Origin: Fonticula alba ATCC 38817
Lineage: Eukaryota; Protista; Nucleariida
Direction: 5' to 3' (one strand)
DNA length: 18,569 nt
Assembly: GCA_000388065.2 (NCBI GenBank)
Contig: KB932203.1
The position numbers and the translations under genes were made by a program. This document shows, piece by piece, positions 1-18,569 of the stretch. Positions within the stretch are counted from its first letter, which is position 1; every line of letters begins with the position of its first letter. The notes under the pieces were generated by a model, which worked only from the letters and a program-made list of their open reading frames with translations, was not told the DNA's origin and searched no databases.

Positions 1-100
1 TCATGCCAAGAGGTTACTAACCAGGTGGCAGATCACACTGGTACCCTTCGTCAAGCCTCACTCACTTGACTTAGGCTTAACCCGTGTGAACCCTGCTACA
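1..100. other. Lower-GC segment abutting ORF 100..1470; possible end of an inserted repeat or LTR
   Basis: 51/100 G+C by hand count versus ~70% downstream. It ends ...CCCTGCTACA, and CA is the usual LTR 3' dinucleotide. In-frame TGA at 67-69 closes the downstream ORF, whose ATG is made from A100 plus TG101-102. Confidence 0.25.
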
Positions 101-1470: not shown

Positions 1471-2886
1471 TGCGGCTCCCGGCTCTCGGGGCACGCATGC
1501 ATTCGCCCTGGCCGGGGCACGGCGACGCACTTGACGGGTCCGTCGCTGGTGGCTGGGCATCGGGCGGTCGCGGTGGCTTTCCCTGTCCCTGTCTCGCCGG
1601 CTGGGCTCACGCTCGCTTATGGGGGGGGGCCGGGCATCGGGCCCACGCCCGGGCCCAGGGTGTTCGGGCAGCAATACACAACTGTCGGCCCGTGACAAAG
1701 GTAGCTCTGTAGGGCAAGAACCCGGGGGGGGGGGGCCGGGTGGCACATTGGTCAGCGTGCCCCCTCACGGCCCGCGGTAAGGCCCACGGTTGTGTGGCCG
1801 CTGGCTTGCATATCGGCCAGCCTCCGGTCGATCGATCCCGGTACCCGGGGCATGGGGCTCGGTACATTCCGGCGGGGGCCCAGTTGGGTTTTCCTCCCGG
1901 CAGCCATGGGTCGGCAAGTGGCTTTTTTCGCGCCGGCGCAGGCTCACCTCCACTCGTCAAGGCCGCTGCAGCGGCGGGCCCTGGGCGGGCATCAGCCGGG
2001 CCCGGCCACAAGAAGGGTAGGCCCGTTGCCGTGGGGGGACCCGGCACCCAGCGCACTCCTGGCAAAGAGGGGCAGGAGCATGGGAGGCAGCGTGTGGCCA
2101 CCATCCGGTCCGGCTCCGAAAGATGATCCAGCGAGGAGGGGCCGTTTTTGGGCGTGTGTTTATTTTCCCGTCGAGTGGGCCGAAAGGGAAACCCGGATGC
2201 CTGCCGAGCTTTGGCGCCCGGCAGGCGGTCTCCGACGCAGGCGTGACCCTTCGCCTGGCGGCACAGGCTCGCCAACCGCCGGGTCGCCGATTCGCGTGCG
2301 AGGATGCCGGCGGCGCGTGGCAACCGACCGTGGGAGGCGACTCGGCGATCGCATGCATCCATCGGGGCGCGCTGGTGCCGGCCGGAGCCGCGGCCTATGT
2401 TTGATGCATGGCCAGGGAGGACGAGTCGGTCCGTGTGCAAGGGAGGTCCTCGGCCCCGGTTGTCCGGAGGTCGCATGGGCTGGCGGCCGACACACCGCCG
2501 TGCGGGGGTGCTTCTGACGGAGGAGGTGCCATGCCGTGTGACCCGCCCACCGGCCGGGCTCGCACACACGCACACATCTGATGAGGCCCTGCCAGTGGAG
2601 ACATAGCGGGGTGCTCCCTGCCGGTCGCGGGTAAACAGCCTGCCACCGCTCGAGGGAGGCGGCGTGGGCCGGGAGCCCCGCTGCCTCGCTGCGGCGCGGG
2701 AGGGGCTTGTGCATGATCCCACGCCGGGAGCCAGTCGGTTTTCTTGTCAAGAAAGACGGGCAAATGAGCATGTGGATGCATTTGCCGCGGGTCAGAGGCT
2801 TGCTCGGGGGGGGGGGGGGGGGTGGGGGGTTATGGGACCCGGGAAAGGGGGCCCGGATTGGGGCGTGGGACAGGGGATGGCATGGG

Positions 2887-4194
2887 TCAGCGAGGTCGGT
2901 CGGGTGGCGTGCCTGCGGGTGAAGTGTCTTGCCGGGCGATGAGGGGCGGATGGCCCGGGGCTGGCCCCGGCGCGCGGAGATAGGGCCCCTCGTCAGGGGG
3001 CGCCCCTCGATGGGGGCTCACCGTGGGGGGGAGCTCGGGGAGCTCCGGCACTAGGGGCTCGCAGTGCCAAAAGGACACACGCCCTCGACCATACTTAGGG
3101 TGAGGCCGCGGGGATGAAAAAAACCCGTGGCGCCTGCGGGTGGCGAGGGCAAGCTCGCACACGATGCTGGTGGAGGGCGGCATGGTGGGCGGGGGGGCCT
3201 CTCATGGGGGACGACGTTCGGCGCCGATGGCCCACCGAGGCTGTGCTTGTCGGGCATGAGACAGCTCTCGGCCGGATGCGAGGGGCTCGCTGCTTCGAAG
3301 AGTGACCAGGAGCCGGACATGTGGGTGGTGCGCCGGGGCGGACGCCACTGCGCGGCGATTCAGATGGGCACACCGGTGGCCTTCGCACTTGTGCGGAGGG
3401 GATTACGCCCTGGCACAAGGTTGGCACTGTGCCGAAGATCCTCCCCCCCCCCCCGGGCAAGAGATGTTGGTCGACGGTGCGGCCCGGGGGCCGGGCGGAC
3501 GCGGGGCCTTTCCCGGGGGCCGCCACACACCCGCATCCGGCCAACGCCGGGGCATCGGCACATACAAAGGGGGACCGCAAGGCCCCGAGGCCCGGGTGCC
3601 AAGCATGCGGGTGGGTGCCCGAGGTCGTGTCCTGGATGGACGGCCTGCCGGGCAGGCTTCGATGCCCGGTAGGCACGGCTCCAGTCGATGATTGACCGGC
3701 GATGGGCAGGGAAAGGCCGCAGCTGCAGGGGCTCGGGGGCACAGCCTGGCTGGGCGGCTTGGGCGAAGGCCGATCCGCAAGATCCAAGATCCCTTGGCCG
3801 AGGGAAGGATGCTGAGGAGCCACCAAGACCGGGGCCAATGTTGTTGCCGGTGACGGCCCCCCGGGCATGACCTGGCGACCCCATGGCAAGGGAATAATAA
3901 TCGCCCGGGCGACGAGCTCCCCATCTCCGGGTATATGGGCACGATCTTGGCCTCTTTGGCCCTGAGGGGGTGCGAGGAGGCCTGGGTGGGCGGCTGGGGA
4001 GGGCTGCACATCCCCGGCCGCGGGCGCTCGCCGGAGGGCACCCGGAGGCTGGGCTCCCGTTCGAGAGGCAGGGCGCGGACGCGCCGCGGCGAGGGCTGGG
4101 TCATCGAGTCCCCAGGGCGGTGTCCTGCAACTGGGGGCACCGCATCGGTGGGTGCCGGGCACAGCGTGCACCGTGCGCCGGGACATGGCTGCAA
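2887..4194 (-). pseudogene. Possible eroded or multi-exon coding sequence, product unknown
   Basis: ORFs 3403..4194 and 2887..3183 share one frame, separated by in-frame stops. Codons 4110->3904 have G/C at 64 of 69 third positions (DSMTQPSPRRVRALPLERE...KEAKIVPIYPEMG). No domain recognised. Confidence 0.3.
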
Positions 4195-5702
4195 AGCGTC
4201 GACCGGCAGCCCGCGGAGCGCGGCCCCGGCCCCGTATGCCGAAGGAAGCCCGCAGACTGGCAGGCAGCCGGAGCCCGGCTTCTAGAATGCCGGTCAGGAG
4301 CCCTTCCAGCCGCAAGCACTCACCCACAGGCAGCGTACCCTTGTGGGAGGGGGGGGGGGGCTTTGTCGATCGGGGAGGTGAGAGGGGGGGGGACGCATGC
4401 GCGGAAGGGATCGGGTCCTGTGACAGCGACAATGAAAGAAGCATGCAAGCAATGCAACAAACCGACATATGCCGGGGTCCACGAGGGGCGGGGGGCGGGG
4501 GGCATCCATCCGGCATGCAGGCGCCGGGGATCACGGAGGCCGGTGCTCGAGCTGCCACATGGGTGGCTGGCTGTGTCGCCCGAAGGTGCGGTGCCAGCCC
4601 GGGAGCATGTCCGATCCCGGCGGGCCGTGGTGGGGGCAATGTGCACCTTGTTTCAAGCATCCCAACATGGTCAGGACACTCGGGATGGGGGAAGGGCGAT
4701 GCCGCCCTCGGGGCCCGATCGCCAGGCCAGGCTTGATACGGAGGGGGGGAAGTTGGGGAAATGCCCGGAAAAAGGCCCTCCCCCCGACGGCGCGCCTCCT
4801 AGTTGGGGGTCCATGCTCGGGGCAGATGCCCGGGGGCTCCTCGTCCGGCCTCGCGCGGGATCGAATGCAGCCGGTTGCCGGGCGTCTTGCCTGCTGGATG
4901 CCTCGTCGGCCCGGGCCGGGGGCCCACAAGAAACCGGGTGTGCGCGAGGGTGGATCCCGGCAGCCCGTCGTCCAAGAGGGTCGCCCATGGGGAAGACAGC
5001 CACCATGTAGACTTGGCGCGAGAGCGGTGATTTCCGCGAGCCCGGCCCCTGTGCTCCGCTGTCCTGGACACTGGGTGTGGGATGGGCCCAGGGCCGATCG
5101 TGGGCTTGCCCGGTTGGGAGGACGACCGGCCGTGGGTGTGATCGTGTCCGACATGTGGCACTTCGGGGGGTGGGCCCGCATGAGCACGCACATGGGCAGG
5201 AATGCCGAGCCGTGCGCCCTCGCGGGCCCCGCCGGTCGGCCCGTGGTTCAGCAACGCGGGGAACCCCCTTCGGGGCCTCTCATCCGCTCGGCACCGGGCG
5301 TCGGTGAATCGGCTCAAGTGCGGCGCCCAGCCCGACACCCCTGCCGGCGGAGGGGCCTCGGAGGGCTTCTTCCTGCAGACCAGTGCTCGGCCCGAACAGC
5401 CCTGCCACCACCCGGCTACTGAGTGGCCCGGCTGGGGTGGTGTTCGCCCGCCGGGGCCAGCCCTCTCCCCCGGGCAAGTGCTTTTTCGCATGCGGCCAGC
5501 CGGCAACTCTGTCTCGGGGCGGGCGGGCGGACGGGCGAGCGGCTTTGCTGCCACTGGGCTCGGAGACAATGGGGTGCCTGCAAGGTGGCGGACATTTTTA
5601 TTGTGCCAAGAAGAGCGAGTCAAGGAAAGAACCGCCAGCAGGCGGCCTGAGATGTCCATGGCCGGGGCAGGCCGAGCGGGGGGGGGGGGATCTCGACAAG
5701 CG

Positions 5703-6442
5703 TCAGTGCCCCGCCAGGCGGGCCAGGTCGGCCGCCACATCGGCGGCGCTCGGGCGGGCTCGGGGATCCCCCACCCATGCCTTTTCATAGACACGGCGGA
5801 AGTCGGGCAGCCATGCCGGCGGGTGGTCCTCGTGGGCGAGCAGGTGAGCTGGGACCACGGCATCCGGGCGCGTGCCTCCGATGACGGCGTGGGTGATTTC
5901 GTCGGCCTCGGCACCTGGAGAGCAACACAGGCAAGCGTGAGACGGGGTGCGGGAGGGGGGCGCGCGGCGGGCCCGGGGAGGGGGCATGGTGGGCATGGCG
6001 GGCAAAGGGGCGCCAATCGAGGGACGAACGCACCGCTCCATGGCTGAACCGGCGCCAGGAGGCTGTAGAGCAGCACCCCGAGGGAGAAAATGTCCACCTT
6101 CAGCTGGGACGCGATGTCATCCTCGGCCGGGGCCAGGGCAAAGGGGACGCCGCGCAGCCGGGCCAGCGTCTCCGGCGGGGCGAAGGGCACACTGCCGGCG
6201 GCCACATTGCCGAGGGTGGGGATGACGGAGAACCGATTGAGCACGAGCGCCACGCCGAAGTCCCCGATGACCGGGCGCAGGTGGCTCGGGTTCTCGGGGT
6301 CCGGCTGGAGGAAGATATTGCCCGGCTTGAGGTCCTTGTGGGCGATGCCGCGGGCGTGGATGAAGGCCACCCCGGCGGCTGGGTCGAGCGGGTCAGTGGT
6401 GGCCCGGGTGCGGCGGACGCGCATGACAGGGGGCAGGAGAGG

Positions 6443-6511
<69 letters not shown>

Positions 6512-9500
6512 CGCACCGATGTCCGCGGCCAGGCGCAGGGCCTGGGCGTGGCCGAAGGCCGACGGCCAGAGCAAGTCCTCCAAATCGCCCGGGTAGTGCG
6601 GCATGATGAGCGCCCGCGTGGGGGCGGCCGTGTAGCCGAGCATGCGGCATACGAAGGGGCACCCGCCGTCCGCCAGGAGGATGCTGCAGAGGGTTGCCGG
6701 GCGAGTGAAAGGTGGCAATGACGCGGGTCGGGTGCGTGTTGGATGGGGCAACATGAGTGAGTGTGTATCTGTGTGTGTGTGTGTGTGTGTATCTGTGTGT
6801 GCGTGTGTGCGTGTGTGCGTGCGTGCGCGTGTGTGCGTGTGTGGGTGTGCGAGGTTCAATGGCACGCACCCGAGGATGGCGATTTCCTGGTCCAGTAGCG
6901 GTTCAAATTGCGTGCGAAAGGGCAAGTCTGAAATCCGAGGGCGCGGACGGGAGGGGGGGGGGGCGAGGCGAGAGCATTGTCAGTGCATGGGCTCCACCAG
7001 AGGAGGCGGCTTGCCCTGTGTGGCTTGGGGCTGTCGCCGGCTTCGACCGGGGCTTCTCTTGGCTGGCGGTGCGGTCACGCACCGGGGGGGACCATCTTGA
7101 CGGCCCCCTCCGAGCCGCCGGCGAGGGTGCACAAGTCGGCACGGAGGAGCGTGCACGGCAGCACCACGGCCTGGGCGCCGCGGCCGAGCTCCTTGCGGGT
7201 ATGCTCGATGCGGTAGTCGAATTCCGGGCTCAGGGTCAGGTGCCCAGGCAGGGAGAGCTCTGCAAGGGGGCATGGGGGGCAGGTCCGCGGGGGAGGTGAG
7301 TTCATTGGCAAGTTCCGGCACGAGCGCAGGGCCAACGACCGGGCATACGCACCGACCATGGTGTTCATGACGGTCAACTCCTCCTGTGGCATGGGGTGCA
7401 TGGCAGGCCCGGCGGGCCGGCCCAAAGGGGCGGCGTGGGGGGGAAGTGCCGGATCCATGCGCAAGAGGGCCGCGGCGGGGGGCGAGGGGGTCCGACCCCG
7501 GGGGCAACCCACCCGGCAAGGGGACACGCGCGTCCGATCCCCGGCGAGTAGCCCAACAGGAGTCCAGCCAAGAGGCGCTCGGTCAGTCGGGGCGGGGAAG
7601 CATACATGCGCGGTCGGACATCGAGCCCATGCGAGCGGGCGGTGCTCCGGCCGACGTACCGGATCGCCGATGCGTTGCATGGGGATGGATTCGGCCCCCT
7701 TGGCGGCCGGCTGCCAGCGACGGTGCCGCCAACACAGGAAGAGCACCAGGCCGGCCAGCATCAGGAGCAGAAGCAGCACCGCGGCCACCGGCACGACGAT
7801 GTACAGGAGGAGGGAGCGCGAGCCTGGACCCATGCCGGGGAGGGGGGGCATGCCGGGGGCGGGTTAGCGGTCGGGCGTGGTGCCCCATGAAAATTCTACC
7901 AACATCGCGAGGAGCCTGCAAGTGTCGAACGTACCGGACTTCGGGCAGCCGCCGGGCAGGCCGCACCCCGGGTCCAGGCAGCCATCGGGCCCCGGGCCGG
8001 AGCACACCTCGCACGACAGGTCGCAGGCGTGGCAATTGAGCCGGTCCTTGTCCGGGGCGAACCACCCGTCGGGGCATGTGGCAATGCATGTGCGCGGCCC
8101 GGTGCCCTGGGGCAGGGCGGCGGTCGGGTGGCGGTCCGACAGGCGGATGGCCCGGAGGTCCGGCTGGCACTGGTCGCAGTCGGCCGGCGCCGCGACACAC
8201 GACAGGCACCCCTCGGCGCAGGGGAGACACCGGGCGGCGGGCATGGCCTGCGAGTGCCAGCCCGCCGGGCACGCCTGCCCCGGGTCGAGGCAGACCCCGA
8301 GGCCGACCAGCAGAAAGCGATCGTCGATGCACCGGTGGCAGGCCGACGGCTCGGGCCCAGTGCATTGGGCACAGTCCGCCGGGCAGGGCTGGCAGATGTC
8401 CCCCCCGGGCGGGGTGGGGTCCGGGCGGAAGAAGCCGGCCGGGCAGGCGACCAGGCAGCCGGTGTCATGGTGGAGCACCCGGCCCGGGCGGCAGGAGGTG
8501 CAATGCTCGGGGCCGGGGCCCTCGGCGCAGGTGGCGCAGTCCGGATGGCAGGCCAGGCACCGGGCCGGGAAGAGGGCCACCGGGTACTCGCCCTCGGAGC
8601 AGCTGGTGACGCAGGTGCCGGGCTCGGTGCCGAGATGGCGGCCGGCCGGGCAGGAGGTGCAAAAGTCCGGGCCGAGCTCGCACTGGGCGCATGCCGGGTC
8701 GCATGCCAGGCACTGGGCCCCGTGCGGGAGGAAGCCCCGGCCGCATGTCGCCACGCACCCATGCGCCGGGTGCTGGACCAGGTCCCCGGTGCAGCGGGAG
8801 CATTGGTGGCTGGCGGTGCCGGTGCACTGGCGGCAGTAGGGCCCGCAGGGGGTGCAACTTTGCTCGGCATCGGGGAAGGTGCCGGCCGGGCAGGCCGCCA
8901 CACAGGCGCCGGCCCACAAGCCGGGCCTGGGCGCCGCGCAGGCGGTACACTGGTCGGCCGCCGGGCCGGCGCACGCGGCGCACGTGGCGTCGCAGGGGAC
9001 ACAGGTGCCCGACAGCGAGGCGGTGCCCGGCGGGCAGGCGGCCAGACAGCGGCTCTGGTGGAAGACATCCGTTCGGCGGCAATGCTGGCACTGGTCGGGC
9101 CCGGGCCCGGAGCAGGTCAGGCATGAGGCATCGCACGCGTGGCACGCCTGGCCCTCCGGGAAGAACCCATGCAGGGGGCAGGCGTCGCGGCAGAACCCCC
9201 GGTCCAGGAGGAAGCCCGCCGGGCAGGCGGTGCAGGCATTGGCCCGGTGGCCGGAGCACTGGGCACAGGTGGCGTGGCAGGGCAGGCAGCCCCCGTCATC
9301 CGGGTGGGGGTAGGTGCCGGGCGGGCAGGCATCGGCACACTGGCCGGCTGGGGTGAGGCTCCAGCCGGGCAGGCACATGAGGCACTGGTTGGCATTGGTC
9401 GGGTCGCATGCCTGGCAGCCGGGGACATTGCACGGGCAGTCGGGACAGTCGGCCGGCAGGCAGGTCCCCTCCGGCTGGAGCAGCCAGCCCTCCGGGCAGG

Positions 9501-12500
9501 AGGTGCAATCGGCGGCCAGCGGCCCGGAGCATGTGGCACACCGCCCGGCGCATGGGTCGCATCCGGCCGCCTGGGGGAAGGTCCCCTCCGGGCAGCTGGC
9601 CAGGCACATGGTCCCCTGGAGCAGGAGCCCCGGGGCGCAGGCGAGGCACTCGTGCTCGGCCGGGCCATGGCACGCGGCGCAGGAGGCATGGCACTGGATG
9701 CACTGCTGGCCGGAGGGGCCGACTTGCAGGTGGCCGGCGCAGGCGCGGCACATGGCACCCGGGTCGGCGGTCACGCAGGACAGGCAGTCGGCCTCGGCGC
9801 AGGGCAGGCAGCGGGCATCGCCGGGGGCACTGGCCGGCCCGGTGCCCTCGGGGCAGGCGCGCACACATTCGCCGGCCGGGCTGAGCAGCCAGCCGGCGGC
9901 GCAGGCGATGCACTGGTCGGGCCCGGGGCCGGTGCACCCGGCGCAGGCCATGTCGCAGGAGCGGCAGGGCCCGGGCAGGCCGCCCGGGAGGAAGCGATTC
10001 CCCAGGCAGGCGGTGCATTGCGAGGTGGCCGGGCCGTTGCAGGTGTGGCAGGTGGCCGCGCAGACATCGCACCGGCGCCCGTCGGCCGAGGGGGCGAAGC
10101 CCGCGGCGCAGCTGGCCACGCAGATGCCGGCCTGGAGGCGCATGCCCGGCGGGCAGTCGCCACATAGCCCGGGCCGGGCGGCCGAGCAGGCGGCGCAGGT
10201 CCCGTGGCAGGAATCGCACCGGGCCGGGGTGGCCCGCAGGCCGGTCTGCTCGTCGGCCACGGGCAGCAGCCCCGGCTGACAGCCGCACGCCGAGGCCCCG
10301 GCCTGCATGCCGCTGGGGCAGACACAGTCGTCGGTGCCGCGCTCCGGCTCGGCATGCTCGATGCACTGGCAGGAGCCGGTGGTGGGGTTGAGCATGCGCC
10401 CGGCCCCGGTGCACCGGCAGCCATGGCCCAGGGAATCGAGCTCGGCCCCGGGCGGGCAAGAGGCGTCGGCCACATCGCCGCGGCTGAAGACCGTCAGGGT
10501 GCCCGGGGCGCCGGGCTCGGCCGGGGCCTCCATCTGCACGATATCCAGCAGGCCATCCTGGTCGACGTCGGCCAGGAAGACGGTCGGCCGGGCGGCCACC
10601 ATGGCGGCCGAGGGGCCTTGGGCATGGGCCTGCCCCGGCAGGAGGACCACCCGGCGGAAGGACGTGTGAAGGATGTCCTGGGCGATGTAGGCCACCAGGC
10701 GCCCGGAGAGCGGGTAGTGCAGGACAAAGTCCAAGATCCCATCGTCATCCACGTGCAGCGCCTGGAGGACCACATCCTCGGAGATGGGCTCCCGCTCGAG
10801 CACGCGCAGGGGACACTCATAGGTCGGGCGGCCGGCGTGGCCGGGGGGGGCTTCTTCGTCGCCGCCGCCGGTGCTGCCGCTGGGGCCGCTGGCGGAGCTG
10901 GCCGCCGGTGACAGCGGCAGGCTGAGGCAATTTTCGCTGCGAATGCACCCCACGTCCATGAGGACAATGCTGTCGGGGAGACCGTCGGCCCGGACGAGGG
11001 CCACATTGTCCCAGTGGTCCTCGTTGCCGAGCGTGAGGACGGTATTGGTGATGTGGCGGTCCGAGGGGTGGAGCAGCCACAGGCACGGGGCATAGGGGCC
11101 GAGGATGATGGCCGGCCCATCGTCCGGGTGGCCCGGGGCCAGATCGCGCAGCGAGTGCACCAGGAGCAAGTCCCTTCCATGGTCGCGGTAGCCGGTGGCC
11201 GGCCCGGGGGAGGGCCAATGCCAGGGCAGGCCGCCCGGCCCGGCCGGGGGGGATAGCTCCAGCAGGAGCAGGTCACAGAGTTGGAAGGGCCCTTGCGCAA
11301 GGGGCAAATAGGACCGCGGCAGCAGGAGCACCTCCTGGCGCCGGCCCGGGGCCGGAACATGCACCAGGCGCAGGCCGTAGTCGCCCAGGCCGCCGGCCAG
11401 CGAGGCGCCATCCAGGAAGGCCTCCTCCTCCGGGTAGGGCAGGGCGAAGTAGGAGAAGGAGCAAGAGGCCATGGCCTGGGTGGGGGTGCTCATCTCCGAG
11501 TGGGCCGCGATGTCGGCCATGACCAAGTGCGACTGGGGCTCCACCAGCCGGGCATGGATGTCACACACCTGGGGGGGGGGCTTGTCGGCCAGGATGGAGG
11601 GCGCCGGCGGCCGGCCGGGTCGAAGCTCCCACACCAAGATCGTGCGGGCGCCCCGGTGGGTGACAAGCTGCTTGGCCAGCCCCGGGGGGAGGGCCGAAGC
11701 CTGGGCCGAGGCCGATGTGGCGGCGAGTGCCTCGGGCGGGGGCCGCGACACGGCCTCGAACCATGGCCGGGGGGCCGGTATCGCCGGGCGCGCCGGGATG
11801 GCCCCCGCCGGGATGGTGTCCCAAGTCTCGGGGACCGATGCGCCAGAGGCCTGGGCGGTGATGGCACGCTCGCCGGAATGGCCCGGCTCCGGGAACCGAT
11901 GGGCCGGGGCTCGCGCGTCCGAGCCATGAGGCCCGACGGATTCGAGGCGGACGGTCCAGCCCGTGCAATAGTCGCGCATGCCCTGGAGCACATGGCCGGG
12001 GCGCATGGCAGCCGGGGCGGTCGGCTGGCCGTCCGGGTGGAAGTCGGCCGCCGGCAGGAACCACTGCTCGGCGACGCCGGCCTCGGGCGCACGGGCCAGA
12101 TGGAGATATTGCCCGGGGCCGAACATGGGGGCCACATGGTGGCCGGGCGAGGACCGGATCGCCCGCAGGGGGGACACCTGCACCGGGACCATGGCGGCCC
12201 AGGCCGGATGAACCGGCACCCGATGGGCCGGCAGCCAACTGTCCGCCAGGGTGGCGGCCTGGCACCGGGCGGCGGCCAGGATGACGGCATCCGGCCGGTC
12301 GCACTGGCGGGCACATTGGCCGGCTTCGGTCACCAGGAACCCCGGGGCACAGGACACACACCGGTGGGCCAGGCATTGCAGGCAGTGGTCGGGCGTGCAT
12401 GCCGGGCATTCGCCCGGGGGGCTTTCCTCGCCTCCGTGGCCGATGCACAGGCTGCACGGCTCGAGGCCGGTCAAATCGGAGTGGTCGAAGATCGGCGGGC

Positions 12501-15500
12501 ATTGGCAGAAGGCCCGGGCGCCCAGTTGGGTGGGCAGCTTCGGGCACAAGCTCCAAGCATGGGGGCCCTCGGGCCGGGGGTCGACCGACTGAGGGCAGAC
12601 ATCGGTCTCGAGCCAGGCGTCGGGCGACCGGCACTGGCCGTCGGCCCCGCAGCCGCAGCCATTTTCCGGGGTCCCCTCGCGGAAGAGGGTCCCCCTGCCG
12701 GTGTGGTGGTTGATGAGGGCCACCTCCGACCGGCCATCCAGCTCCACATCCAGGACCACCAAGTCCACCGGGGCCCACTCGAAGGGCAGGAAGTTGGCCC
12801 ACCGGGTGACGGCCGGCTGATGGGTGACGGTGAGGGCGTGGGTGCCGGGGTGCTGGTCGAAGGCCAGGTGCACCACGTGCAGCCAGTTGCCGGTCCACAG
12901 GAAGAGCCGCGCCCGGCCGGGCTCCATGGTCCGGGGGTCGACCGCGGCCGCCAGCCGGTCGGTGCCTTGGCGACCGGAGTGCAGGTCGCCCAAGGTCAGC
13001 ACCGGCAAGGGGGCGCGGAAGTCCGGGCGGAAATCGCGCCCGGTGGCCGTGTTCCGGAGGAGGAACAGCACCTCCAGCGAGGAGGGCCCCGGGGAGTGGG
13101 GGATCAGGAGCAGCGGCGGCCGCGTGGTGCCGGCCCCCGGGAGCAGGGGGACCAGGCGTCCGCATGGGAGCGCCGGCAGGAGGACCCTCCCATCCAGCTC
13201 CGAGCTGGTGATCATCGGGTGGCTAAAGGCCTTCGGGTACCAAATGAGCTGGCAACCAGCCTCCGGCGTGGCCAGGTAGGGGTCAAGACTGACCAGGGCC
13301 AGCAGGGTCTCAATGCCGAAGTCATTGTCCACGGCATGCCAGAGGGCCGAGTGAATGGCCTCGGTGGCGATGCGCTGCGAGCCGAAGGAGGGCCCTGACA
13401 CCGCATGGAGCATGGGGGTCCCGGGGCCGGCCGGGCTGCCGGAAGTCCGGCCGACGGACACATGTGCCGGCTCGTGAATGGGCGCCATCCGGGCCCCATG
13501 CTCATGGCACATGCGGGCGCTGAGGGGATTGCCCCAGTCGCACAGGAAGACCGAGCTCCCGAGGGCGGTGGCCAGGGCCGGGTTGCCGTACTTGGCAATG
13601 GGCCGGGTGGCGGCGATGCTGTCGGCGGTCGAGATGGAGGAGTAGACCCCCCGGCGGGGGCCTTCCCGGAAGGACACCAGGCCTTGGATGAATCCGTTGT
13701 TGAGGAAGCCGATCCCCTCGGCCGAGGGCCGACTGCGCAAGTGCAGCATGCTGCGCTGCTGGGCCTCGACAAGGTCCAGCAACTTGTCCGAGTAGGTGCC
13801 AGTCCAAAGGGCGACCACCGGCCGGCGGCACTCTTCGGGCGCCATGTGGCCGGGGCAGGCGTCGAAGCCGAAAGACCCCTCCAGGAGGGCCTCGTAAAAG
13901 GGCCGCGTGGGGGGGGCGCGCACGATCGTGACATCGGGCCCGGGCTCCGCAACGCAGGCGCCATTTCGCAGGGGCCCATTCTCCGGGCATGACAAGCACT
14001 CGAGGGGACCGGGCCCGGAGCAGGTTTCGCAGGACCCGTCGCAGGGCTGGCACTCTCGCACTTCGGGCAGGGCAGGCCCCGTGGGAAAGTCGGCAGCCCC
14101 GGGGGTGGGGGTGGTGGGGGGGGGGGGCGGTCGGCCGGTGAGCCCGACCAAGGGGTGCCAGGCGCAAGCCACAGGGCCCCGGGGGCGGCCATGCGGAGGC
14201 CATTTGAGGTAAGGAGGCGTTCGGCAAGTCGAAGACACAGGCGGAGGGGGGGGGGGTGTCAGTGGCGGCCGGGGCCATGGCATGTGCTTAGCAGGGCGGG
14301 AGGAAGGCGTCAAGGAGGTCCGGATGCATGACGCAGGGACATGGCCCGGGGTGCCCCTTGCGCCAGGACCATGATCGAGTGATTCCCGGGAGGCGGGGCC
14401 GCAAGGGCAGCAGCCACCAGGCGCACCGTCGGCCCGGAAGAAGCCCACCTCGCAGAACTCACACGGAGCAAGGTAATCCTCCAGGGCATTGGGATCGTCA
14501 CATTCGCATGTGGGCGCGGCGTAGAAGTCGTCCAGGGCCGGGGCGCACCGAGCCCACGGGCCGCAGAGGCAATTCGGCGAGGCGGCCTCCAGCGACAGGA
14601 GGAGGATGCCCCCGCTGTGGGCCGAAGTAGCCATGGCCAGGTCGGGGGATCCATCGGCGTCGAAGTCCCCCACGGCGAGGTCCATCCAGCCGCCATACCG
14701 TTCGAGGGGCAACTCCGGCAGCAGGGCCCGGCCGTCGACATCGGCCAGGGAGAGGAGCAATCCCGGGCCGGGGCTCGGCCGCACCGGGCCCGGGATCAGC
14801 CACACCCGAGTGCCATGGGCCACGATGATGCTCGTGTGGTCGGGATGTACCAGCTTCGGGGCCGGGGCGGCCTTCGGCTGGCGACTGGTCTGCGGCGGCT
14901 CCAGGAGCCCCGGATCGCCGGCGGTCATGTCGGCCAGGGACACATGCACCGGGAGGGCCATGTTGGAGGACAGGAAGAAGATGATGCGCTCGGTGAGGGT
15001 GGACTCGAGGCCGGAAATGATGGCCACATCGGTGGCGAGGCCATCGGCGTCAAAGTCCCCGACGATGATTTTCCCGGCCCGGAAGCCCGACGGCAGTCGG
15101 TACAGCAGGGAGACGTCGCCCAGGGATCCGGGGCCGACCGGGCGGGCGATGTTGCTCAGCCAGTAGATGGACTCCGGGCCGTCCGGCTGCAGCGGCAGGG
15201 TGGCCACAAACACCGCGTCCACTTGACCGTCATTGTCGAGATCGGTCGGCGTCAGCAGCCGGATGTTGGCCAGGCCGAAGTTGTCCTGCTGCTCGGTGTC
15301 CTGGCCGCCGAATGCCAAGGCTCGGCTCAGGATGGCATCCTGGTGGATGGTCAAAAGTTGGGGGTCCATGCGCCGGGGATGGTGCGAGTCGAATGCGAGC
15401 ATCGGCTCCCGGCCCCAGAGGGTGAAGAAGGTGGCTCCGCCGATGCCCTGCAGGATGACATCCGAGTCGACTTGCACCAGGGACTCGTACACCTGCGAGG

Positions 15501-15972
15501 CGGCGGGGACCTGGGTCGGCTTGAGGACCAGCGGCCCCGGGCCGTTCGGCGCAAAGGGATGCACCCCTAACAGGCAGGCCACGGACGAGGGAGGGCCCTG
15601 GAGGAAGGACACCGGGCGGTCGGCGGAGAAATCGCCCCGCTGCTTGCCCTCGGGCGAGCTTCGAACCGAGAAGTAGGTGTCGGCGAAGTGGATGTCATCG
15701 AAGGAGTCCCGGCCGCCGATGGCCATATAGCGCTGGGAGAAGAAGTCGCAAAACCGGAGCTCGGAATCCAGGTTGGGGGACCTTGTGCTGGGCAGGTAGT
15801 GGACGGTGCGGAACGATGGGACCGATGATGCCCTTGCACCAGGGCCGTCTGGCGGCCCAAGGAGCAGCAGCAGCAGCAGCAGCAGCAGGAGCAGCAGCAG
15901 CGGCAGCAACGGCCGCGGCCTCAGGCCCCGCGGAATCCGGAATGGACAGGGGCCGGCCCCGGTGGCTGACAT
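5703..15972 (-). CDS. Giant single-pass receptor Ser/Thr protein kinase (TKL-like) with FG-GAP/VCBS modules, EGF-like units and a furin-like repeat stalk; 9 exons, ~2941 aa
   Basis: Exons 15972-14427, 14060-7935, 7823-7660, 7383-7353, 7259-7083, 6927-6870, 6683-6517, 6378-6034 and 5914-5703 sum to 8826 nt (3n). All junctions are GT..AG with matching phases, and splicing restores continuous kinase subdomains. Signal peptide, TM and all catalytic motifs are present. Intron 1 (14426-14061) is the least certain junction. Confidence 0.88.
6444..6511 (+). repeat. 68-nt poly-G homopolymer (poly-C in the pre-mRNA) inside intron 7
   Basis: Uninterrupted G from 6444 to 6511. It lies between donor GTGCGC (6516) and branch CTGAC / acceptor CAG (6379). 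Confidence 0.95.
6754..6850 (+). repeat. Compound (GT)n/(GC)n microsatellite in intron 6
   Basis: Pure (GT)10 at 6771-6790 flanked by degenerate gtgc/gtgt units, within intron 6869-6684. Confidence 0.9.
7729..7812 (-). other. Transmembrane helix of the receptor kinase
   Basis: LLLYIVVPVAAVLLLLLMLAGLVLFLCW followed by the basic stop-transfer RHRR; encoded at the start of exon 3. Confidence 0.92.
7936..10218 (-). repeat. Stalk of 16 tandem furin-like Cys-rich repeats
   Basis: I count 16 units of the form C-x2-C-x3/4-C-x2-C-x-GP-x4-C-x2-C, from CDSCHGTCAAC to CHACDLSCEVCSGPGPDGC. Confidence 0.92.
10532..15260 (-). other. FG-GAP/VCBS-like Ca-binding beta-hairpin motifs spread over three ectodomain modules
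   Basis: TDLDNDGQVD (~15210-15260), VGDFDADGLATD (~15010-15075), VGDFDADGSPDL (~14620-14685), degenerate LDVELDGRSEV (~12710-12765), LHVDDDGILDF (~10715-10770) and ADVDQDGLLDI (~10532-10582). Confidence 0.8.
14061..14426 (-). other. Predicted 366-nt in-frame intron 1 hidden inside the 2782-aa ORF
   Basis: Donor G|GTGCGC at 14426. The acceptor AAG at 14063-14061 is the first AG after ~220 AG-free nt. Two poly-C tracts lie inside. Removal restores GFFRAD-VRECQPCDGSC furin spacing and deletes a Pro-rich insert. Confidence 0.65.
15829..15972 (-). other. Signal peptide with poly-Leu core
   Basis: MSATGAGPCPFRIPRGLRPRPLLP-L14-GPPDGPGARA|SS: basic n-region, hydrophobic h-region and an A-x-A cleavage motif. 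Confidence 0.85.
15865..15900 (+). repeat. (CAG)8-GAG-(CAG)3 trinucleotide repeat, read as CTG = Leu on the coding strand
   Basis: Read directly; it encodes most of the signal-peptide Leu run. Confidence 0.95.
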
Positions 15973-16150
15973 GCTGATGCCGGACGATCGGGGTCCCGGT
16001 GTGTGGAGGGGCTCCAAAGGGGGGGGGGCGAGGGGGCGAGTGCAAGGCAAGGGCAGCAAGGGGAGGGGGAGGCGACGGGGAGGGCCGAGGCGTTGGGCGA
16101 CCGTAGAGACCAGACTGGCCCACACCCGGGCACGCCGGCGGGAGGGTGGA

Positions 16151-16157
16151 TTATATA
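16151..16157 (-). promoter_or_regulatory. TATA box (TATATAA) of the receptor kinase gene
   Basis: Canonical TATATAA on the gene's strand in otherwise ~70% GC sequence, ~180 nt upstream of the signal-peptide ATG (15972). Confidence 0.6.
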
Positions 16158-17381
16158 GCCGCGGGGCAGGAGCCAGGAAAAGTAAACAAAAATGGGAAAC
16201 ATTCCCAAGCATGTTTCAATGTTTGTTTGGTTCCCTCCGAGATCTTCCGGATCAGGGGGCGAGAACCCGAACGGCGGGGGGGGGGCGCGCCTCACGGGGG
16301 GCGATTCCCAGGGCCGGGAGAGGTGGGCGGGGCGCTACTAGCAGTGCTATCTGGCCGTCCCCCTCGCGCAACAAAGGCCCCGCCCGCGGACGCGGGAAGT
16401 GCCATCCTTTTCACCCAACGGCGGGGGGTCCGGGCGTACCGTTATTATGCCGGCGTCTGGCTGGCCATCACAATGTGGCGTTTGCGGATGTGCGCCGAAC
16501 GCCGCGTGTCCGGCCGACCCGGCTCCCACGAATCGGCCCCTTGGTGGGGTGCTCCATTCGTCCGATGCCCGTGACTTCTGGCAGATCATATGCCCGATCG
16601 GTCTCCTGGTCTCTCTCGCGCGCCGGTGTCCGACACGGGGCTGCCCTCTCCTCCCGGTGTGGGACCGTGGCCTTTCTTTTCTTTCGGTGACCCGCCCCGG
16701 GCCCCGGGAATGGCTCTTCCTCCAGCACCACCCTCTCTTTCGCCCGGCTTTTGCCCCCCACCACCTGCATGTATGGCGGTCGTCTGTTTCCTCCCTCTTT
16801 TGAGCTCCTCCCGTCTTCGGGCTCTCCCTTGCACATTCCCCGTCTCGCGCCTTCGCTCGCCCCCACTCGGCCTCTCTCCCGGGTCCGCTGGGCTCGCCGC
16901 TGTTCCTGTCCATCCGCCGGCCCACCAATGCCTGGCAAGGAAGGCGCACACGATCCGCGGAGCTCCGGCCCCTCCCATAGCCGGCAAGCTACCAATACCA
17001 AGTGCCCCGGCGGTTGCCATCGACCTGGTGGGTTTTTGTGGGCAGGGATTCGCCCTGGGGCGGGCGGAGATGTCGGGAATTCCATCCTGCTCACGACCAG
17101 CGGTCGCCGGCAGCCGGGCAAACGGGCTCGGGCATGGCCGACGCCGATGTGCCTGTCCTCCCTGCCTCTCCGATGGGGGCACCCTCTCGCCTTCTGGACA
17201 CGAACGCTGTAGCACCCCCCCCCCCTGCAGCACCACAACATTTTATGCCTCGGGGCTGTGGACCACGCCAGATACGAGCGCATGCTCCAGGCCACACGCA
17301 GATAGAGCCCCAAAGCCGTGAGGCTGCACCTCGCGCACCACTCCGAGGGCACTCCGCGCGCGTGAAAAAAGAAACAGGATG

Positions 17382-18338
17382 TCAGCCATCGGGAACCCAA
17401 ACAGCGGCACGCGTGGCTCGCTCCGAAGATCGGCCAGCATCCGAAAGGTCGCGCGCCCGGCCGCGGGTCTGCCAGGGGAGGCGACTCACCACCGCCAGGA
17501 GGCGCGCCACAACCGTGGCCCCGAGTCTCGAGGCGGGACCGGCGGACATTCGAGCGGTGCGCGTGGCTCCGGCTTGCTGGCCCTCCGGGGCACCCGGCAA
17601 GAGGCTCCGCCTTGGTCCATGAACCCCACCGCCGCCGGGGCCGGCCAAGCGGGCCGCGCGATCGGGGCCCTCGGGCGACACCCACGAGGCGCCGACCGAA
17701 AAGTCGCCGGGCATCAGGGAGGCTGACGCGGCGCCCTGGCACCCGATCGCCTCAATGTGGGTCCGATCGAATGGCGAGCCTGAGCTGAGCGCCTCGAGGC
17801 GCTCGGCATGGGTGATCGACCGGATATGCCGGGGGACATCCAAGCACGCCAGAGGCCGGGGGAGGCCCGGCCAGGGGGCCGCCCCGGGGCAGGCCAATTC
17901 CCCACCGCCAGCGGGCAGACGGGCATTCGCCCAAACAATAGCACCCCTGAAGGATCGTTGCCATAACGGGCAGGAACGATGAATTCCGGCACGCGTGGGC
18001 GCAGGCTCTTTGTCCCTGGGGCTGGTGGGACATTCATCGAGGGGGCGCACTTCGGCCACCTCCGCCGCCCTGAGCGCATGAGGAGGGGGACGACCGGTGT
18101 GAAAATCAACTGCCAACGGTCGGGATTTACCTCCGCTGATCGGAGCGCGCGCGGCTTGCCCTTCCGGGCGGATCTGCCGGCCGCCCGGTTCCCTGGGGAT
18201 GTTGTTGGTCGAAATCTCCTGACGCGGCGCCCTGCACTTGTGTGAGTCTGGCGGCTGGGCATGCTTGCAACCTGGGGCTTTTGCCGGACAAAAGGTGGGC
18301 TGCTCCTTGTTATGGGTTATGTGTATAGCCATGCACAT
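17382..18338 (-). CDS. Putative exon(s) of an unidentified gene; likely exon ~18218-17490, probably 5'-incomplete
   Basis: 318-codon open frame. Codons 17870->17670 have G/C at 57 of 67 third positions (LACLDVPRHIRSITHAERLEALSSGSPFDRTHIEAIGCQG). The in-register plus frame has stops. A phase-0 CAG acceptor (18221-18219) and a GTGAGT donor (17489) bound a 729-nt candidate exon. No domain recognised. Confidence 0.35.
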   Translation of the reverse strand: MCMAIHITHNKEQPTFCPAKAPGCKHAQPPDSHKCRAPRQEISTNNIPREPGGRQIRPEGQAARAPISGGKSRPLAVDFHTGRPPPHALRAAEVAEVRPLDECPTSPRDKEPAPTRAGIHRSCPLWQRSFRGAIVWANARLPAGGGELACPGAAPWPGLPRPLACLDVPRHIRSITHAERLEALSSGSPFDRTHIEAIGCQGAASASLMPGDFSVGASWVSPEGPDRAARLAGPGGGGVHGPRRSLLPGAPEGQQAGATRTARMSAGPASRLGATVVARLLAVVSRLPWQTRGRARDLSDAGRSSERATRAAVWVPDG

Positions 18339-18440
18339 GTTATTATGTATATATTATATCCACGTACACCCACGTACACCCACGTACGCCCGTGTGCACA
18401 CCCATGTACACACATATGTATACGCATATACACGCACACA
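18310..18440. repeat. AT-rich alternating purine/pyrimidine tract with a 10-bp tandem repeat (CACGTACACC x~3, 18361-18390)
   Basis: cacgtacacc cacgtacacc cacgtacgcc, flanked by tatgtatatattatat and acacatatgtatacgcatatacacgcacaca. Confidence 0.75.
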
Positions 18441-18569
18441 CCCCGTGCGAAGGGGTGATAATGCCTCAGCATTCACTCCGGCAGGTGGTGTCGGTCCCTC
18501 ACGGGGAATCGTGTGAGGTCCACCGGGCTGGGTTTGTGTAGCCCTGCCTGAGGAGTCTGGAGGGGGGGG

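What the first reader, a model, noticed from the sequence alone, without database searches (positions are those of the whole stretch)
5703..15972. ~2,940-aa receptor kinase with three stacked FG-GAP/EGF/furin cassettes on a 16-repeat stalk
The ectodomain looks like three serial cassettes, each a ~400-600-aa module with DxDxDG calcium-blade motifs followed by an EGF/laminin-like Cys unit and furin repeats. Cassettes 1 and 2 end alike (CLCGPWARC...CECDD...PCEFCEVG versus CGCGADGQC...CQCPP...PCSLCIG), suggesting internal duplication. FG-GAP repeats are known from integrin-alpha propellers and bacterial VCBS adhesins, and furin-like repeats from animal RTKs and proprotein convertases. Here both are wired to a Ser/Thr TKL-type kinase. 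Inference: a Ca-dependent adhesion or recognition receptor held far from the membrane. If the host is Fonticula-like, it is a candidate for prey, kin or aggregation sensing that evolved independently of animal RTKs and plant RLKs.
Basis: partly seen in the sequence, partly recalled or inferred. Interest (0 to 1): 0.75.

Follow-up and report, generated by a model that had tools for sequence, protein, structure and literature searches.

The report
Giant propeller-headed receptor kinase of Fonticula
This is a real, spliced and expressed gene of the slime-mould-like amoeba Fonticula alba for a roughly 2,940-residue surface receptor: integrin-like calcium-loop propeller heads on a long cysteine-rich stalk, wired to a serine/threonine-type kinase, and one of at least eleven copies found only in this organism.

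Summary
Window 15972-5703 (minus strand) is one gene. RNA-derived contigs join the end of the ectodomain exon to the transmembrane and kinase exons at six of the seven 3' introns I predicted. The 2,782-codon "single ORF" very probably hides one more in-frame intron (14426-14061).

- **Head 1:** a Pfam FG-GAP module with three canonical DxDxDG loops.
- **Head 2:** no Pfam match, but it folds (pLDDT 74.5, pTM 0.82) as a seven-bladed propeller closest in shape to FG-GAP, integrin-alpha and BBS propellers.
- **Head 3:** two FG-GAP blades by sequence; its fold is unresolved.
- **Stalk:** 16 furin-like units, as stated.
- **Kinase:** all catalytic residues are present (HKDLKPGN, DFG).

Not supported: duplication of whole cassettes, and a firm TKL assignment. 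"EGF/laminin" rests on cysteine spacing only.

A head-2 profile found only Fonticula alba proteins plus one marginal metagenome hit among 1.84 billion representatives. The family has 10 annotated paralogs besides this gene, some in tandem arrays.

The scan had already found paralogs of this family on other DNA of the same genome, and the paralogs carry automatic GenBank names. I call it a new variant of a known kind, the receptor kinase. Function is inferred.

The parts
15826..15972 (-). Start codon and signal peptide (MSATGAGPCPFRIPRGLRPRP-L17-GPPDGPGARA). The poly-Leu core is encoded by an (AGC)15 repeat on the + strand.
   Evidence: Read from the translation. TRF repeat at 15863-15908. The paralog N-termini align from here.
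14572..15825 (-). Head 1 (ORF aa 130-547): FG-GAP module with three canonical Ca-loop motifs, DLDNDG at aa 324, DFDADG at aa 386 and DFDADG at aa 516. It is presumed to be a seven-bladed propeller.
   Evidence: Pfam FG-GAP_3 2.1e-8 in 2 stretches and FG-GAP 3.5e-4. Internal blade HMM i-E 5e-20, 2e-18 and 1e-14. The fold was not predicted here.
14427..14571 (-). Cys unit 1 (CLCGPWARC...CEC...CEFC, 7 Cys), up to the donor of the hidden intron.
   Evidence: Invariant in paralogs. No Pfam EGF hit.
14061..14426 (-). Probable in-frame intron of 366 nt with no stop codon. The donor is G|GTGCGC. The acceptor is AAG|TG at 14061, or possibly GAG|AG at 14055. It corresponds to ORF aa 596-718, a Pro-rich stretch.
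   Evidence: Absent from all nine paralogs compared that span it; every BLAST alignment breaks at q517-548 and resumes at q635-641. GC3 falls to 0.62-0.70 against 0.88 overall. Donor motif. Not checked with RNA.
13936..14060 (-). One furin-like unit after head 1 (CQPCDGSCETCSGPGPLECLSCP...C).
   Evidence: Weak VSP match 0.57.
12658..13935 (-). Head 2 (ORF aa 760-1185): seven-bladed beta-propeller with a lineage-specific sequence. The last blade carries a degenerate Ca loop (DVELDG) that is canonical (DxDGDG) in four paralogs.
   Evidence: AF2 pLDDT 74.5, pTM 0.82, 29 strands. Foldseek returns only propellers, several of them integrin alpha. VIA-align Z 14-16.6 over 275-306 residues. In the ESM Atlas shape search, 7 of 10 rows are FG-GAP families, TM 0.55-0.56. 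No Pfam hit in 0 of 10 members. Alignment.
12253..12657 (-). Cys unit 2 (CGCGADGQC...CQC...CSLC) followed by about 1.5 furin-like units.
10459..12252 (-). Head 3 (ORF aa 1321-1918): about 600 aa with two FG-GAP blades at its C-terminal end (VDDDGILD at aa 1821, ADVDQDG at aa 1882). The rest includes a variable Pro/Ala-rich part whose fold is not resolved.
   Evidence: Pfam FG-GAP_3 0.007 in the window and in 8 of 9 family members, best 1.6e-6. hhalign against head 1 gives probability 90%, E 1.5e-6. The AF2 model failed at pLDDT 38.9 with a 3-sequence alignment.
10219..10458 (-). Four short CxC units (CRC, CQC, CVC, CGC) between head 3 and the stalk.
   Evidence: Conserved in paralogs.
7935..10218 (-). 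Stalk of 16 furin-like / VSP-type CXXC units of about 48 aa with 8 Cys each, ending exon 1.
   Evidence: Pfam VSP 1.9e-23 in 9 stretches, GF_recep_IV 5.7e-14 and Furin-like_2 0.006. Unit list. No DNA-level tandem repeat.
7660..7823 (-). Exon 2: transmembrane helix (LLLYIVVPVAAVLLLLLMLAGLVLFLCW) followed by a basic stop-transfer stretch (RHRRW).
   Evidence: Joints at 7822/7934 and 7382/7659 in RNA contigs.
7353..7383 (-). Exon 3, a 31-nt mini-exon (EELTVMNTMV) in the juxtamembrane region.
   Evidence: Carried by X2 record 9. 70-78% identical to paralogs.
7083..7259 (-). Exon 4: kinase subdomains I-II (LGRGAQAVV, AVKMV).
   Evidence: 72-81% identical to paralog kinases.
6870..6927 (-). Exon 5: kinase alpha-C helix (FEPLLDQEIAIL).
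   Evidence: 80-100% identical to paralogs.
6517..6683 (-). Exon 6: kinase subdomains IV-V.
   Evidence: (X3 record 15).
6034..6378 (-). Exon 7: catalytic loop HKDLKPGN, DFG, APPE and DIFSLG.
   Evidence: Pfam Pkinase 5.7e-14. PDB hits at about 1e-8. 72-75% identical to paralogs.
5703..5914 (-). Exon 8: kinase subdomains X-XI and the stop codon (5705-5703). An AATAAA-like signal lies near 5600.
   Evidence: X1 record 1 joins exons 7 and 8 and runs to 5666.

Best explanation
One minus-strand gene of Fonticula alba encodes a type-I transmembrane receptor protein kinase of about 2,941 aa. It probably has nine coding exons.

The parts, in order:
- signal peptide
- FG-GAP propeller with three Ca2+-loop motifs, a small Cys knot and one furin-like unit
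- a second seven-bladed FG-GAP-shaped propeller, a Cys unit and furin-like units
- a third module of about 600 aa ending in two FG-GAP blades, then four CxC units
- a rigid stalk of 16 furin-like units
- one transmembrane helix
- a short juxtamembrane segment
- a Ser/Thr-type kinase with every catalytic residue in place: Lys in AVK, Glu in the alpha-C helix, HKD...N, DFG and APE.

Shown here: the gene structure, the transcript continuity, the domain content and the fold of head 2. Also shown: the gene belongs to a Fonticula-restricted family of at least 11 genes, partly arranged in tandem.

Inferred: the propeller heads, held tens of nanometres from the membrane by the disulfide-rich stalk, bind an extracellular ligand, probably with Ca2+ at the blade loops. 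Candidate ligands are prey surfaces, matrix or another cell. Ligand-driven clustering would then switch on the cytoplasmic kinase, as in other single-pass receptor kinases.
For: Gene and transcript:
- The exon/intron model is in frame with a uniform donor consensus.
- Spliced contigs show 6 of the 7 3' introns and link exons 1-2-3-4, 4-5-6 and 7-8.
- Exon peptides align colinearly with the annotated paralogs P0005, P0006 and P0011 at 43-100% identity (57-100% for exons 2-7), including the exon 6|7 junction.

Domains:
- Pfam gives FG-GAP_3, VSP, GF_recep_IV and Pkinase.
- An internal blade HMM supports the Ca-loop blades.
- Head 2 folds as a propeller at pLDDT 74.5 and pTM 0.82. It matches integrin-alpha, BBS and WD propellers at Z 14-16.6 and FG-GAP clusters at TM 0.55-0.56.
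- Head 3 shares two blades with head 1, hhalign probability 90%.
- FG-GAP_3 hits 8 of 9 head-3 homologues.

Family:
- The head-2 profile found 9 proteins among 1.84e9 representatives. Eight are F. alba and one is a marginal metagenome hit.
- Adding P0002 and P0011 gives 10 annotated paralogs.
- The kinase word search drops from at least 209 bits for Fonticula to 79 bits for everything else.
- The kinase is more conserved (about 70-80% identity) than the heads (28-47%), as expected for a receptor family with diversifying ectodomains.
Against: - No ligand, localisation or kinase-activity data exist.
- The head 1 fold was not predicted, and the head 3 model failed (pLDDT 38.9).
- Head 2 has no sequence-level FG-GAP match, and in this copy its one Ca loop is degenerate.
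- Its structural matches do not separate FG-GAP from WD40 propellers by Z.
- The catalytic loop is HKD rather than HRD, and the glycine loop is GxGxxA. Activity is therefore plausible but not proven.
- The hidden intron has an unusual AAG acceptor and no RNA support.
- The RNA evidence consists of assembled contigs from one study whose library type is only guessed.
Confidence: 0.78

Rival explanations
1. It is mainly an adhesion molecule. The FG-GAP heads would stand in for integrins in cell-cell or cell-substrate contact during collective invasion or fruiting, and the kinase would only report or tune attachment.
For: The heads have integrin-alpha-like propeller shape and Ca-loop motifs. F. 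alba makes actin-rich cell-cell contacts, yet its genome is reported to lack obvious integrins, cadherins and Dictyostelium-type adhesion molecules (PMC9097593). Some annotated paralogs lack a complete kinase.
Against: There are no thigh or calf domains, no GFFKR motif and no beta-subunit partner. The kinase is the most conserved part of the family, which argues that signalling matters. No expression data by life stage were obtained.
Confidence: 0.3
2. It is a diversifying recognition receptor for prey bacteria, or for kin and self, comparable in logic to innate-immune pattern receptors or allorecognition loci. The family would have expanded by tandem duplication and its ectodomains would evolve fast.
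For: There are at least 11 paralogs, some in tandem arrays that broke the assembly. The heads are 28-47% identical against about 70-80% for the kinases. The catalytic loop is HKD and so non-RD (read from sequence). From memory, non-RD kinases are over-represented among innate-immune receptors. The Entamoeba CXXC-repeat transmembrane kinase PATMK takes part in phagocytosis (PMC2211552).
Against: No test of positive selection or polymorphism was done. Lys keeps the positive charge of the RD arginine. Only one genome is available.
Confidence: 0.3
3. The kinase is catalytically dead, and the protein works as a scaffold or decoy receptor.
For: The kinase is very divergent: best PDB E-values are only about 1e-8 to 1e-12. 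The C-lobe of paralog P0002 found nothing in the PDB. The motifs are HKD and GxGxxA.
Against: All residues needed for catalysis are present (K, E, D, N, DFG, APE) and are conserved across paralogs.
Confidence: 0.15
4. The long ORF and the kinase exons are two neighbouring genes, or a mis-assembly of tandem paralogs, and not one gene.
For: Paralog loci in the public assembly are broken by gaps, and two annotated models (P0001, P0002) are chimeras across such gaps.
Against: The window has no gap. A single spliced contig joins exon 1 to exons 2-4 with a canonical intron removed. The full-length paralog P0011 (2,917 aa) has the same colinear architecture.
Confidence: 0.03

Closest known systems
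Integrin alpha-subunit head (FG-GAP seven-bladed beta-propeller with Ca2+ hairpin loops)
   Same: Head 1 matches the FG-GAP profiles and has DxDxDGxxD loops in its C-terminal blades. Head 2 superposes on the alphaM, alphaX, alphaL, alphaV and alpha5 propellers (Z about 15). The protein is extracellular, on a long leg, with a single transmembrane pass.
   Different: There are three heads in series and not one. There are no thigh or calf Ig-like legs, no GFFKR motif and no beta subunit. The leg is made of furin-like repeats and the tail is a kinase. F. alba is reported to lack integrins (PMC9097593).
Entamoeba histolytica transmembrane kinases (for example PATMK, EhTMKB1-9)
   Same: They are amoebal single-pass receptors with a CXXC-repeat (Giardia VSP-like) ectodomain, one transmembrane helix and a divergent kinase of unclear specificity. 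The family is large and lineage-expanded. PATMK acts in phagocytosis (PMC2211552, PMC2880585).
   Different: No propeller heads are described for them, and they are much shorter (PATMK is 146 kDa). Homology of the kinases was not tested here.
Animal EGFR/insulin-receptor type RTKs (furin-like, GF_recep_IV cysteine-rich domains)
   Same: Furin-like disulfide modules sit between a ligand-binding head and the membrane (GF_recep_IV 5.7e-14). The topology is a type-I receptor kinase.
   Different: The catalytic loop is HKDLKPGN (Ser/Thr type) and not HRDLAARN. Fonticula has no tyrosine kinases (PMC4342544). The heads are propellers and not L domains. There are 16 or more repeats.
Bacterial FG-GAP/VCBS propeller proteins, including Ser/Thr kinases with FG-GAP domains
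   Same: They are the nearest shapes to head 2 in the ESM Atlas (TM 0.55-0.56) and the nearest by language-model features for heads 2 and 3. One 1,516-aa database protein (P0099) combines Pkinase with FG-GAP.
   Different: There is no detectable sequence homology to head 2: the head-2 profile found none of them. They lack a furin-like stalk. P0099 matches kinase exon 7 at its residues 256-346, near its N-terminus.
Plant receptor-like kinases / non-RD pattern-recognition receptors
   Same: They are single-pass receptors with a Ser/Thr kinase, form lineage-specific tandemly expanded families, and lack the RD arginine.
   Different: Their ectodomains are unrelated (LRR, LysM, lectin). A kinase relationship was not shown here.

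Membership tests
FG-GAP repeat / integrin-alpha-type beta-propeller (Pfam PF13517, PF01839) | Significant match to an FG-GAP profile above the curated cut-off | tested here: met
   Head 1 scores FG-GAP_3 42.2 bits on the whole ORF and 35.1 bits alone, against a cut-off of 26.9. Head 3 scores only 17.4 bits in this copy but matches in 8 of 9 homologues. Head 2 matches in 0 of 10.
FG-GAP repeat / integrin-alpha-type beta-propeller | Seven-bladed beta-propeller fold | tested here: inconclusive
   Met for head 2 (pLDDT 74.5, pTM 0.82, Z 14-16.6 over the whole domain, FG-GAP clusters nearest in the Atlas). Head 1 was not folded. The head 3 model is unusable (pLDDT 38.9).
FG-GAP repeat / integrin-alpha-type beta-propeller | Ca2+-binding DxDxDGxxD loops in the blades | tested here: met
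   Three in head 1, one strict and one degenerate in head 3. In head 2 the loop is degenerate in this copy (DVELDG) and canonical in four paralogs. Metal binding itself was not tested.
Integrin alpha subunit proper | Propeller followed by thigh/calf Ig-like legs (Integrin_alpha2), a GFFKR motif after the transmembrane helix, and a beta-subunit partner | tested here: not met
   No Integrin_alpha2 hit. The juxtamembrane sequence is CWRHRRWQ. Integrins are reported absent from the genome (PMC9097593).
Type-I receptor protein kinase | Signal peptide, ectodomain, one transmembrane helix and a cytoplasmic kinase, all on one transcript | tested here: met
   Translation. Pkinase 5.7e-14. Spliced contigs link exon 1 to the transmembrane and kinase exons.
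Active eukaryotic protein kinase | Catalytic residues: beta-3 Lys, alpha-C Glu, HxD...N, DFG, APE | tested here: met
   AVK, DQEIAIL, HKDLKPGN, DFG and APPE are all present and conserved in paralogs. Enzyme activity cannot be tested with these tools.
TKL group kinases | Clusters with TKL kinases (Raf, RIPK, IRAK, MLK, LRRK) rather than other groups | tested here: inconclusive
   Exon 7 matches Chk1, GCN2, LKB1 and Raf, all at about 1e-8. The whole kinase domain of paralog P0005 matches the EGFR N-lobe at 4.8e-12, B-Raf at 7.5e-11, RIPK1 at 6e-10 and ULK1 at 1e-9. Pfam scores Pkinase above PK_Tyr_Ser-Thr. No phylogeny was made.
Tyrosine kinases (animal-type RTK) | HRDLAARN or HRDLRAAN catalytic loop; membership of group A TKs | tested here: not met
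   The loop is HKDLKPGN. A published survey found no TK in Fonticula (PMC4342544).
Furin-like / VSP-type CXXC cysteine-rich repeats | Profile match above the cut-off and a regular 8-Cys unit | tested here: met
   VSP 83.4 bits (cut-off 31.4) in 9 stretches and GF_recep_IV 52.5 bits (cut-off 29.5). Sixteen units are listed.
EGF / laminin-EGF domains | Match to an EGF-type profile with six-Cys connectivity | tested here: not met
   No EGF-family Pfam hit at E<=5 on either Cys unit. Only a CxC...CxC spacing resembles EGF. UniProt's 'EGF-like domain-containing' name for two paralogs is automatic.

The most novel reading that the evidence does not exclude
The Fonticula-only family of triple-propeller receptor kinases is the missing cell-contact or recognition system of this aggregative amoeba. 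It would be an integrin-like Ca2+-dependent adhesion head fused directly to its own kinase, diversified in tandem arrays for prey, kin or partner discrimination. It would have evolved independently of animal integrins and RTKs and of plant RLKs.
Probability: 0.15. Interest if true: 0.8.

Novelty: new variant of a known kind. Interest (0 to 1): 0.5.

Why it matters
Fonticula alba belongs to a sister lineage of the fungi. It forms collectives and fruiting bodies, yet its genome is reported to lack obvious cadherins, integrins and Dictyostelium-type adhesion molecules (PMC9097593). It also has no tyrosine kinases (PMC4342544).

A lineage-restricted, expanded family that puts integrin-like propellers on a furin-repeat stalk and couples them to a Ser/Thr-type kinase is a concrete candidate for how this organism senses surfaces, prey or neighbours. 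It would be a further independent invention of receptor kinases.

It is not a surprise in kind, because receptor kinases with cysteine-rich stalks are known. The paralogs are already in GenBank under automatic names, and this scan had already reported paralogs.

Tried and rejected
**Whole-cassette duplication.** BLASTP of cassette against cassette gave nothing significant; the best was E=0.05. Profile-profile comparison of head 1 against head 2 gave E=0.0013 with shallow profiles and E=0.04 with deeper ones. Only single or double blades are shared. I rejected duplication as a demonstrated fact.

**Head 3 model.** AF2 on head 3 with a 3-sequence alignment gave pLDDT 38.9. I discarded it and used it for no fold search.

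**Language-model look-alikes.** Heads 2 and 3 both pointed to FG-GAP, at 0.93-0.94. Recognition was low and shared features were 150-155 where about 170 is expected. I kept these as leads only.

**Weak searches.** The C-lobe of paralog P0002 against the PDB gave no hit. Pfam on eight flanking ORFs gave nothing. A paper search for Fonticula with FG-GAP found no paper.

**Alternative splice sites for the hidden intron.** A GTGGGC donor at 14448 with a CAG acceptor would delete the conserved VGFFRAD, so I rejected it.

**The window's own annotated protein.** Neither protein search returned it. I could not establish whether or how this locus is annotated.

I never joined the exons into one protein for any search or fold. 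The kinase was examined exon by exon by reference, and through the contiguous kinase domains of database paralogs. No kinase phylogeny on the joined domain was made.

Full report
**What is there.** The window is about 71% G+C. On the minus strand a 2,782-codon ORF (16212-7864) runs into a series of short open pieces that carry a transmembrane helix and kinase motifs. Reading the DNA and computing frames gives an eight-exon model:
- exon 1: 15972-7935
- exon 2: 7823-7660
- exon 3: 7383-7353
- exon 4: 7259-7083
- exon 5: 6927-6870
- exon 6: 6683-6517
- exon 7: 6378-6034
- exon 8: 5914-5703

All donors read GT[GA]CG[TC], all acceptors read CAG, and every junction is in frame.

I laid the contigs of four small 2012 runs (one study) on 5550-9500. 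Their library type is only guessed, but the contigs are spliced.
- They show joints at 7934/7822, 7659/7382, 7353/7259, 7083/6927, 6870/6683 and 6030/5910. These are my introns 1, 2, 3, 4, 5 and 7 to the base, allowing for the stated cut ambiguity.
- One 462-nt contig (X2 record 9) runs from exon 1 (7934-8071) through exons 2 and 3 into exon 4.
- Another contig links exons 4-5-6, and another links exons 7-8.
- Intron 6 contains a 68-nt homopolymer and was not bridged.
- That junction (..LAADI|AAGVAFIH..) is reproduced in the annotated paralog proteins (..MAADIAAGMAFIH..).

The ectodomain and the TM-kinase part therefore belong to one mRNA.

**A hidden intron.** ORF residues 596-718 are a Pro-rich stretch.
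- It is absent from all nine homologues compared that span it. The multiple alignment has a 120-column gap there, and every BLAST alignment breaks at that point.
- Third-position G+C falls to 0.62-0.70 there, against 0.88 for the gene.
- The stretch begins exactly at a G|GTGCGC donor in the phase used by most other donors of this gene.
- The best acceptor, AAG|TG at 14061, keeps the frame and gives FFRAD-V-RECQPC. This matches the paralogs' FFRPDGGACQEC in length.

I conclude that 14426-14061 (366 nt) is very probably an in-frame intron. The non-CAG acceptor is a weakness.

**The ectodomain, module by module** (numbering from the ORF's first codon at 16212).

*Head 1 (aa 130-547).*
- It matches Pfam FG-GAP_3 (2.1e-8, two stretches) and FG-GAP (3.5e-4).
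- It has three canonical DxDxDG loops at aa 324, 386 and 516.

*Head 2 (aa 760-1185).*
- It has no Pfam match, neither in this protein nor in any of nine homologous segments.
- With a 10-sequence alignment AlphaFold gives an all-beta model with pLDDT 74.5, pTM 0.82 and 29 strands.
- Foldseek against the PDB returns only beta-propellers, with several integrin alpha heads near the top at E about 1e-5.
- VIA-align gives Z 14-16.6 over 275-306 residues spanning the whole domain, for BBS9, integrin alphaM, alphaX and alphaL, BBS7 and EED. This is a generic seven-blade signal that does not separate propeller classes.
- The ESM Atlas shape search is more specific. Seven of ten rows are FG-GAP families, with TM 0.55-0.56 over 306-314 residues.
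- In the alignment, the last blade of head 2 carries a canonical DxDGDGxxE loop in four paralogs and a degenerate DVELDG in this copy.

*Head 3 (aa 1321-1918).*
- It has a sub-threshold FG-GAP_3 match in this copy (0.007), but 8 of 9 homologues match, the best at 1.6e-6.
- Its last two blades align with two blades of head 1 at hhalign probability 90%, E 1.5e-6.
- The only model I obtained, from a 3-sequence alignment, was unusable at pLDDT 38.9.

*What follows each head.* Each head is followed by a Cys unit. Heads 1 and 2 are then followed by one or two furin-like units, and head 3 by four CxC units and the stalk.

*Stalk.*
- It has 16 furin-like units of about 48 aa with eight Cys each.
- Pfam gives VSP 1.9e-23 in nine stretches and GF_recep_IV 5.7e-14.
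- The units are old, with no DNA-level tandem repeat.
- No EGF-type profile matches the Cys units.

**Internal duplication.** Whole cassettes are not demonstrably duplicates.
- BLASTP between cassettes is not significant.
- Head 1 against head 2 by hhalign gives E=0.0013 over the last blade plus the Cys unit with shallow profiles, and it weakens to E=0.04 with deeper profiles.
- What the heads share is one or two FG-GAP blades.
It is not statistical evidence of duplication.

**The kinase.**
- Exon 7 alone matches Pkinase at 5.7e-14 and PK_Tyr_Ser-Thr at 0.0016.
- The catalytic residues are all present: LGRGAQAVV, AVK, the alpha-C Glu, HKDLKPGN, DFG, APPE, DIFSLG and a subdomain-XI Arg.
- The loop is of Ser/Thr type and non-RD (HKD).
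- Against the PDB, exon 7 matches Chk1, GCN2, LKB1 and Raf equally at about 1e-8.
- The contiguous kinase domain of paralog P0005 is about 70-80% identical to the window's exons 4, 6 and 7. It matches the EGFR N-lobe (4.8e-12), B-Raf (7.5e-11), RIPK1 (6e-10) and ULK1 (1e-9).
- A word search with that domain finds the Fonticula paralogs at 209 bits or more, then drops to 79 bits for GCN2-type and bacterial kinases.
- TKL affinity is therefore possible but unresolved. A tyrosine-kinase identity is excluded by the loop and by the published absence of TKs in Fonticula (PMC4342544).
That step, and a phylogeny on the joined domain, were left out.

**Family and organism.**
- A search with the head region found two F. 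alba proteins, H696_06116 and H696_06082, at 37-38% identity.
- A full HMMER scan of 1.84 billion representatives with a head-2 profile found nine proteins. Eight are F. alba and one is a marginal 289-aa metagenome hit.
- Adding P0002 and P0011, there are 10 annotated paralogs of 1,046-2,959 aa.
- All of the long ones are colinear with this gene. P0011 (2,917 aa) has the complete architecture.
- Two paralog loci in assembly GCA_000388065.2 are tandem arrays interrupted by gaps, and their annotated models are chimeras across those gaps.
- Heads are 28-47% identical between paralogs and kinases about 70-80%.
- The window's own annotated protein did not appear in either search, so I cannot say how this locus is annotated.
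- Earlier notes of this scan list six more such genes on other pieces of the same genome, one followed up as a 4,005-aa triple FG-GAP receptor kinase. The scan has therefore found this family before on other DNA.

**How it most likely works.**
- *Shown:* the architecture and the transcript.
- *Inferred from established knowledge of single-pass receptor kinases and of integrin-type propellers:* the propeller heads bind an extracellular partner, probably with Ca2+ at the blade loops, and the disulfide-rich stalk holds them far from the membrane. Ligand-induced clustering activates the kinase.
- *Open:* whether the partner is prey, matrix or another Fonticula cell. The adhesion and recognition readings are given as rivals.

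**Comparison with what is known.**
- It works like a receptor kinase, and its heads look like integrin-alpha heads.
- It is not an integrin: no thigh or calf legs, no GFFKR motif and no beta partner.
- It is not an animal RTK.
- The nearest described architecture in an amoeba is the Entamoeba CXXC-repeat transmembrane kinase family, which lacks propeller heads (PMC2211552).
- I found no paper that mentions Fonticula together with FG-GAP.
- Toret et al. state that the genome lacks obvious integrins and cadherins (PMC9097593).

**Verdict.** This is a new variant of a known kind and of moderate interest. It is a good candidate for experiments on Fonticula's cell contacts or prey sensing, but paralogs are already annotated automatically and the family was already flagged by this scan.

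Noticed in passing
window 6444-6511: A perfect 68-nt homopolymer (G on the + strand, C in the transcript sense) lies inside intron 6. RNA-derived contigs stop at it. In the reading frame it would mimic a poly-Pro tract.
   Followed up: partly
window 6757-6851: A GT/CA microsatellite of about 95 nt lies inside intron 5. It stays open in frame, so exons 5-7 sit in one 708-codon ORF together with their introns.
   Followed up: no
window 15863-15908: An (AGC)15 trinucleotide repeat on the + strand encodes the poly-Leu core of the signal peptide. Its length could vary between strains.
   Followed up: no
window 100-1470 (+ strand): An ORF of 456 aa shows strong coding periodicity (GC3 0.89-0.94). 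Part of it (about 1045-1455) resembles the furin-like repeats of the paralogs (tblastn E down to 6e-7). It is probably a convergent neighbouring gene for another Cys-repeat protein. It has no Pfam hit at E<=0.01.
   Followed up: partly
window 1800-5600 and 16000-18569: No frame shows the GC3 excess typical of coding sequence here, despite many long ORFs. These stretches are apparently long non-coding flanks or UTRs on both sides of the gene.
   Followed up: partly
L002 10001-27367 and L001 10001-47269: The annotated paralogs H696_06116 and H696_06082 are chimeric models that run across assembly gaps in tandem arrays of this family. L002 holds at least three copies. L001 has a 27.6-kb N run inside the 'gene'.
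   Followed up: partly
P0099 (database protein, 1,516 aa, Logan assembly): This protein combines Pkinase with FG-GAP/FG-GAP_3 domains. It shows that the kinase-plus-FG-GAP combination exists elsewhere, probably in a bacterium. Its exon-7-like region is 33% identical.
   Followed up: no
P0003 (H696_03220), C-terminus: The closest paralog (44-47% identity) has the kinase N-lobe and the last exon but lacks the catalytic-loop exon in its annotated model. This is either a mis-annotation across a poly-C intron or a natural pseudokinase copy.
   Followed up: no
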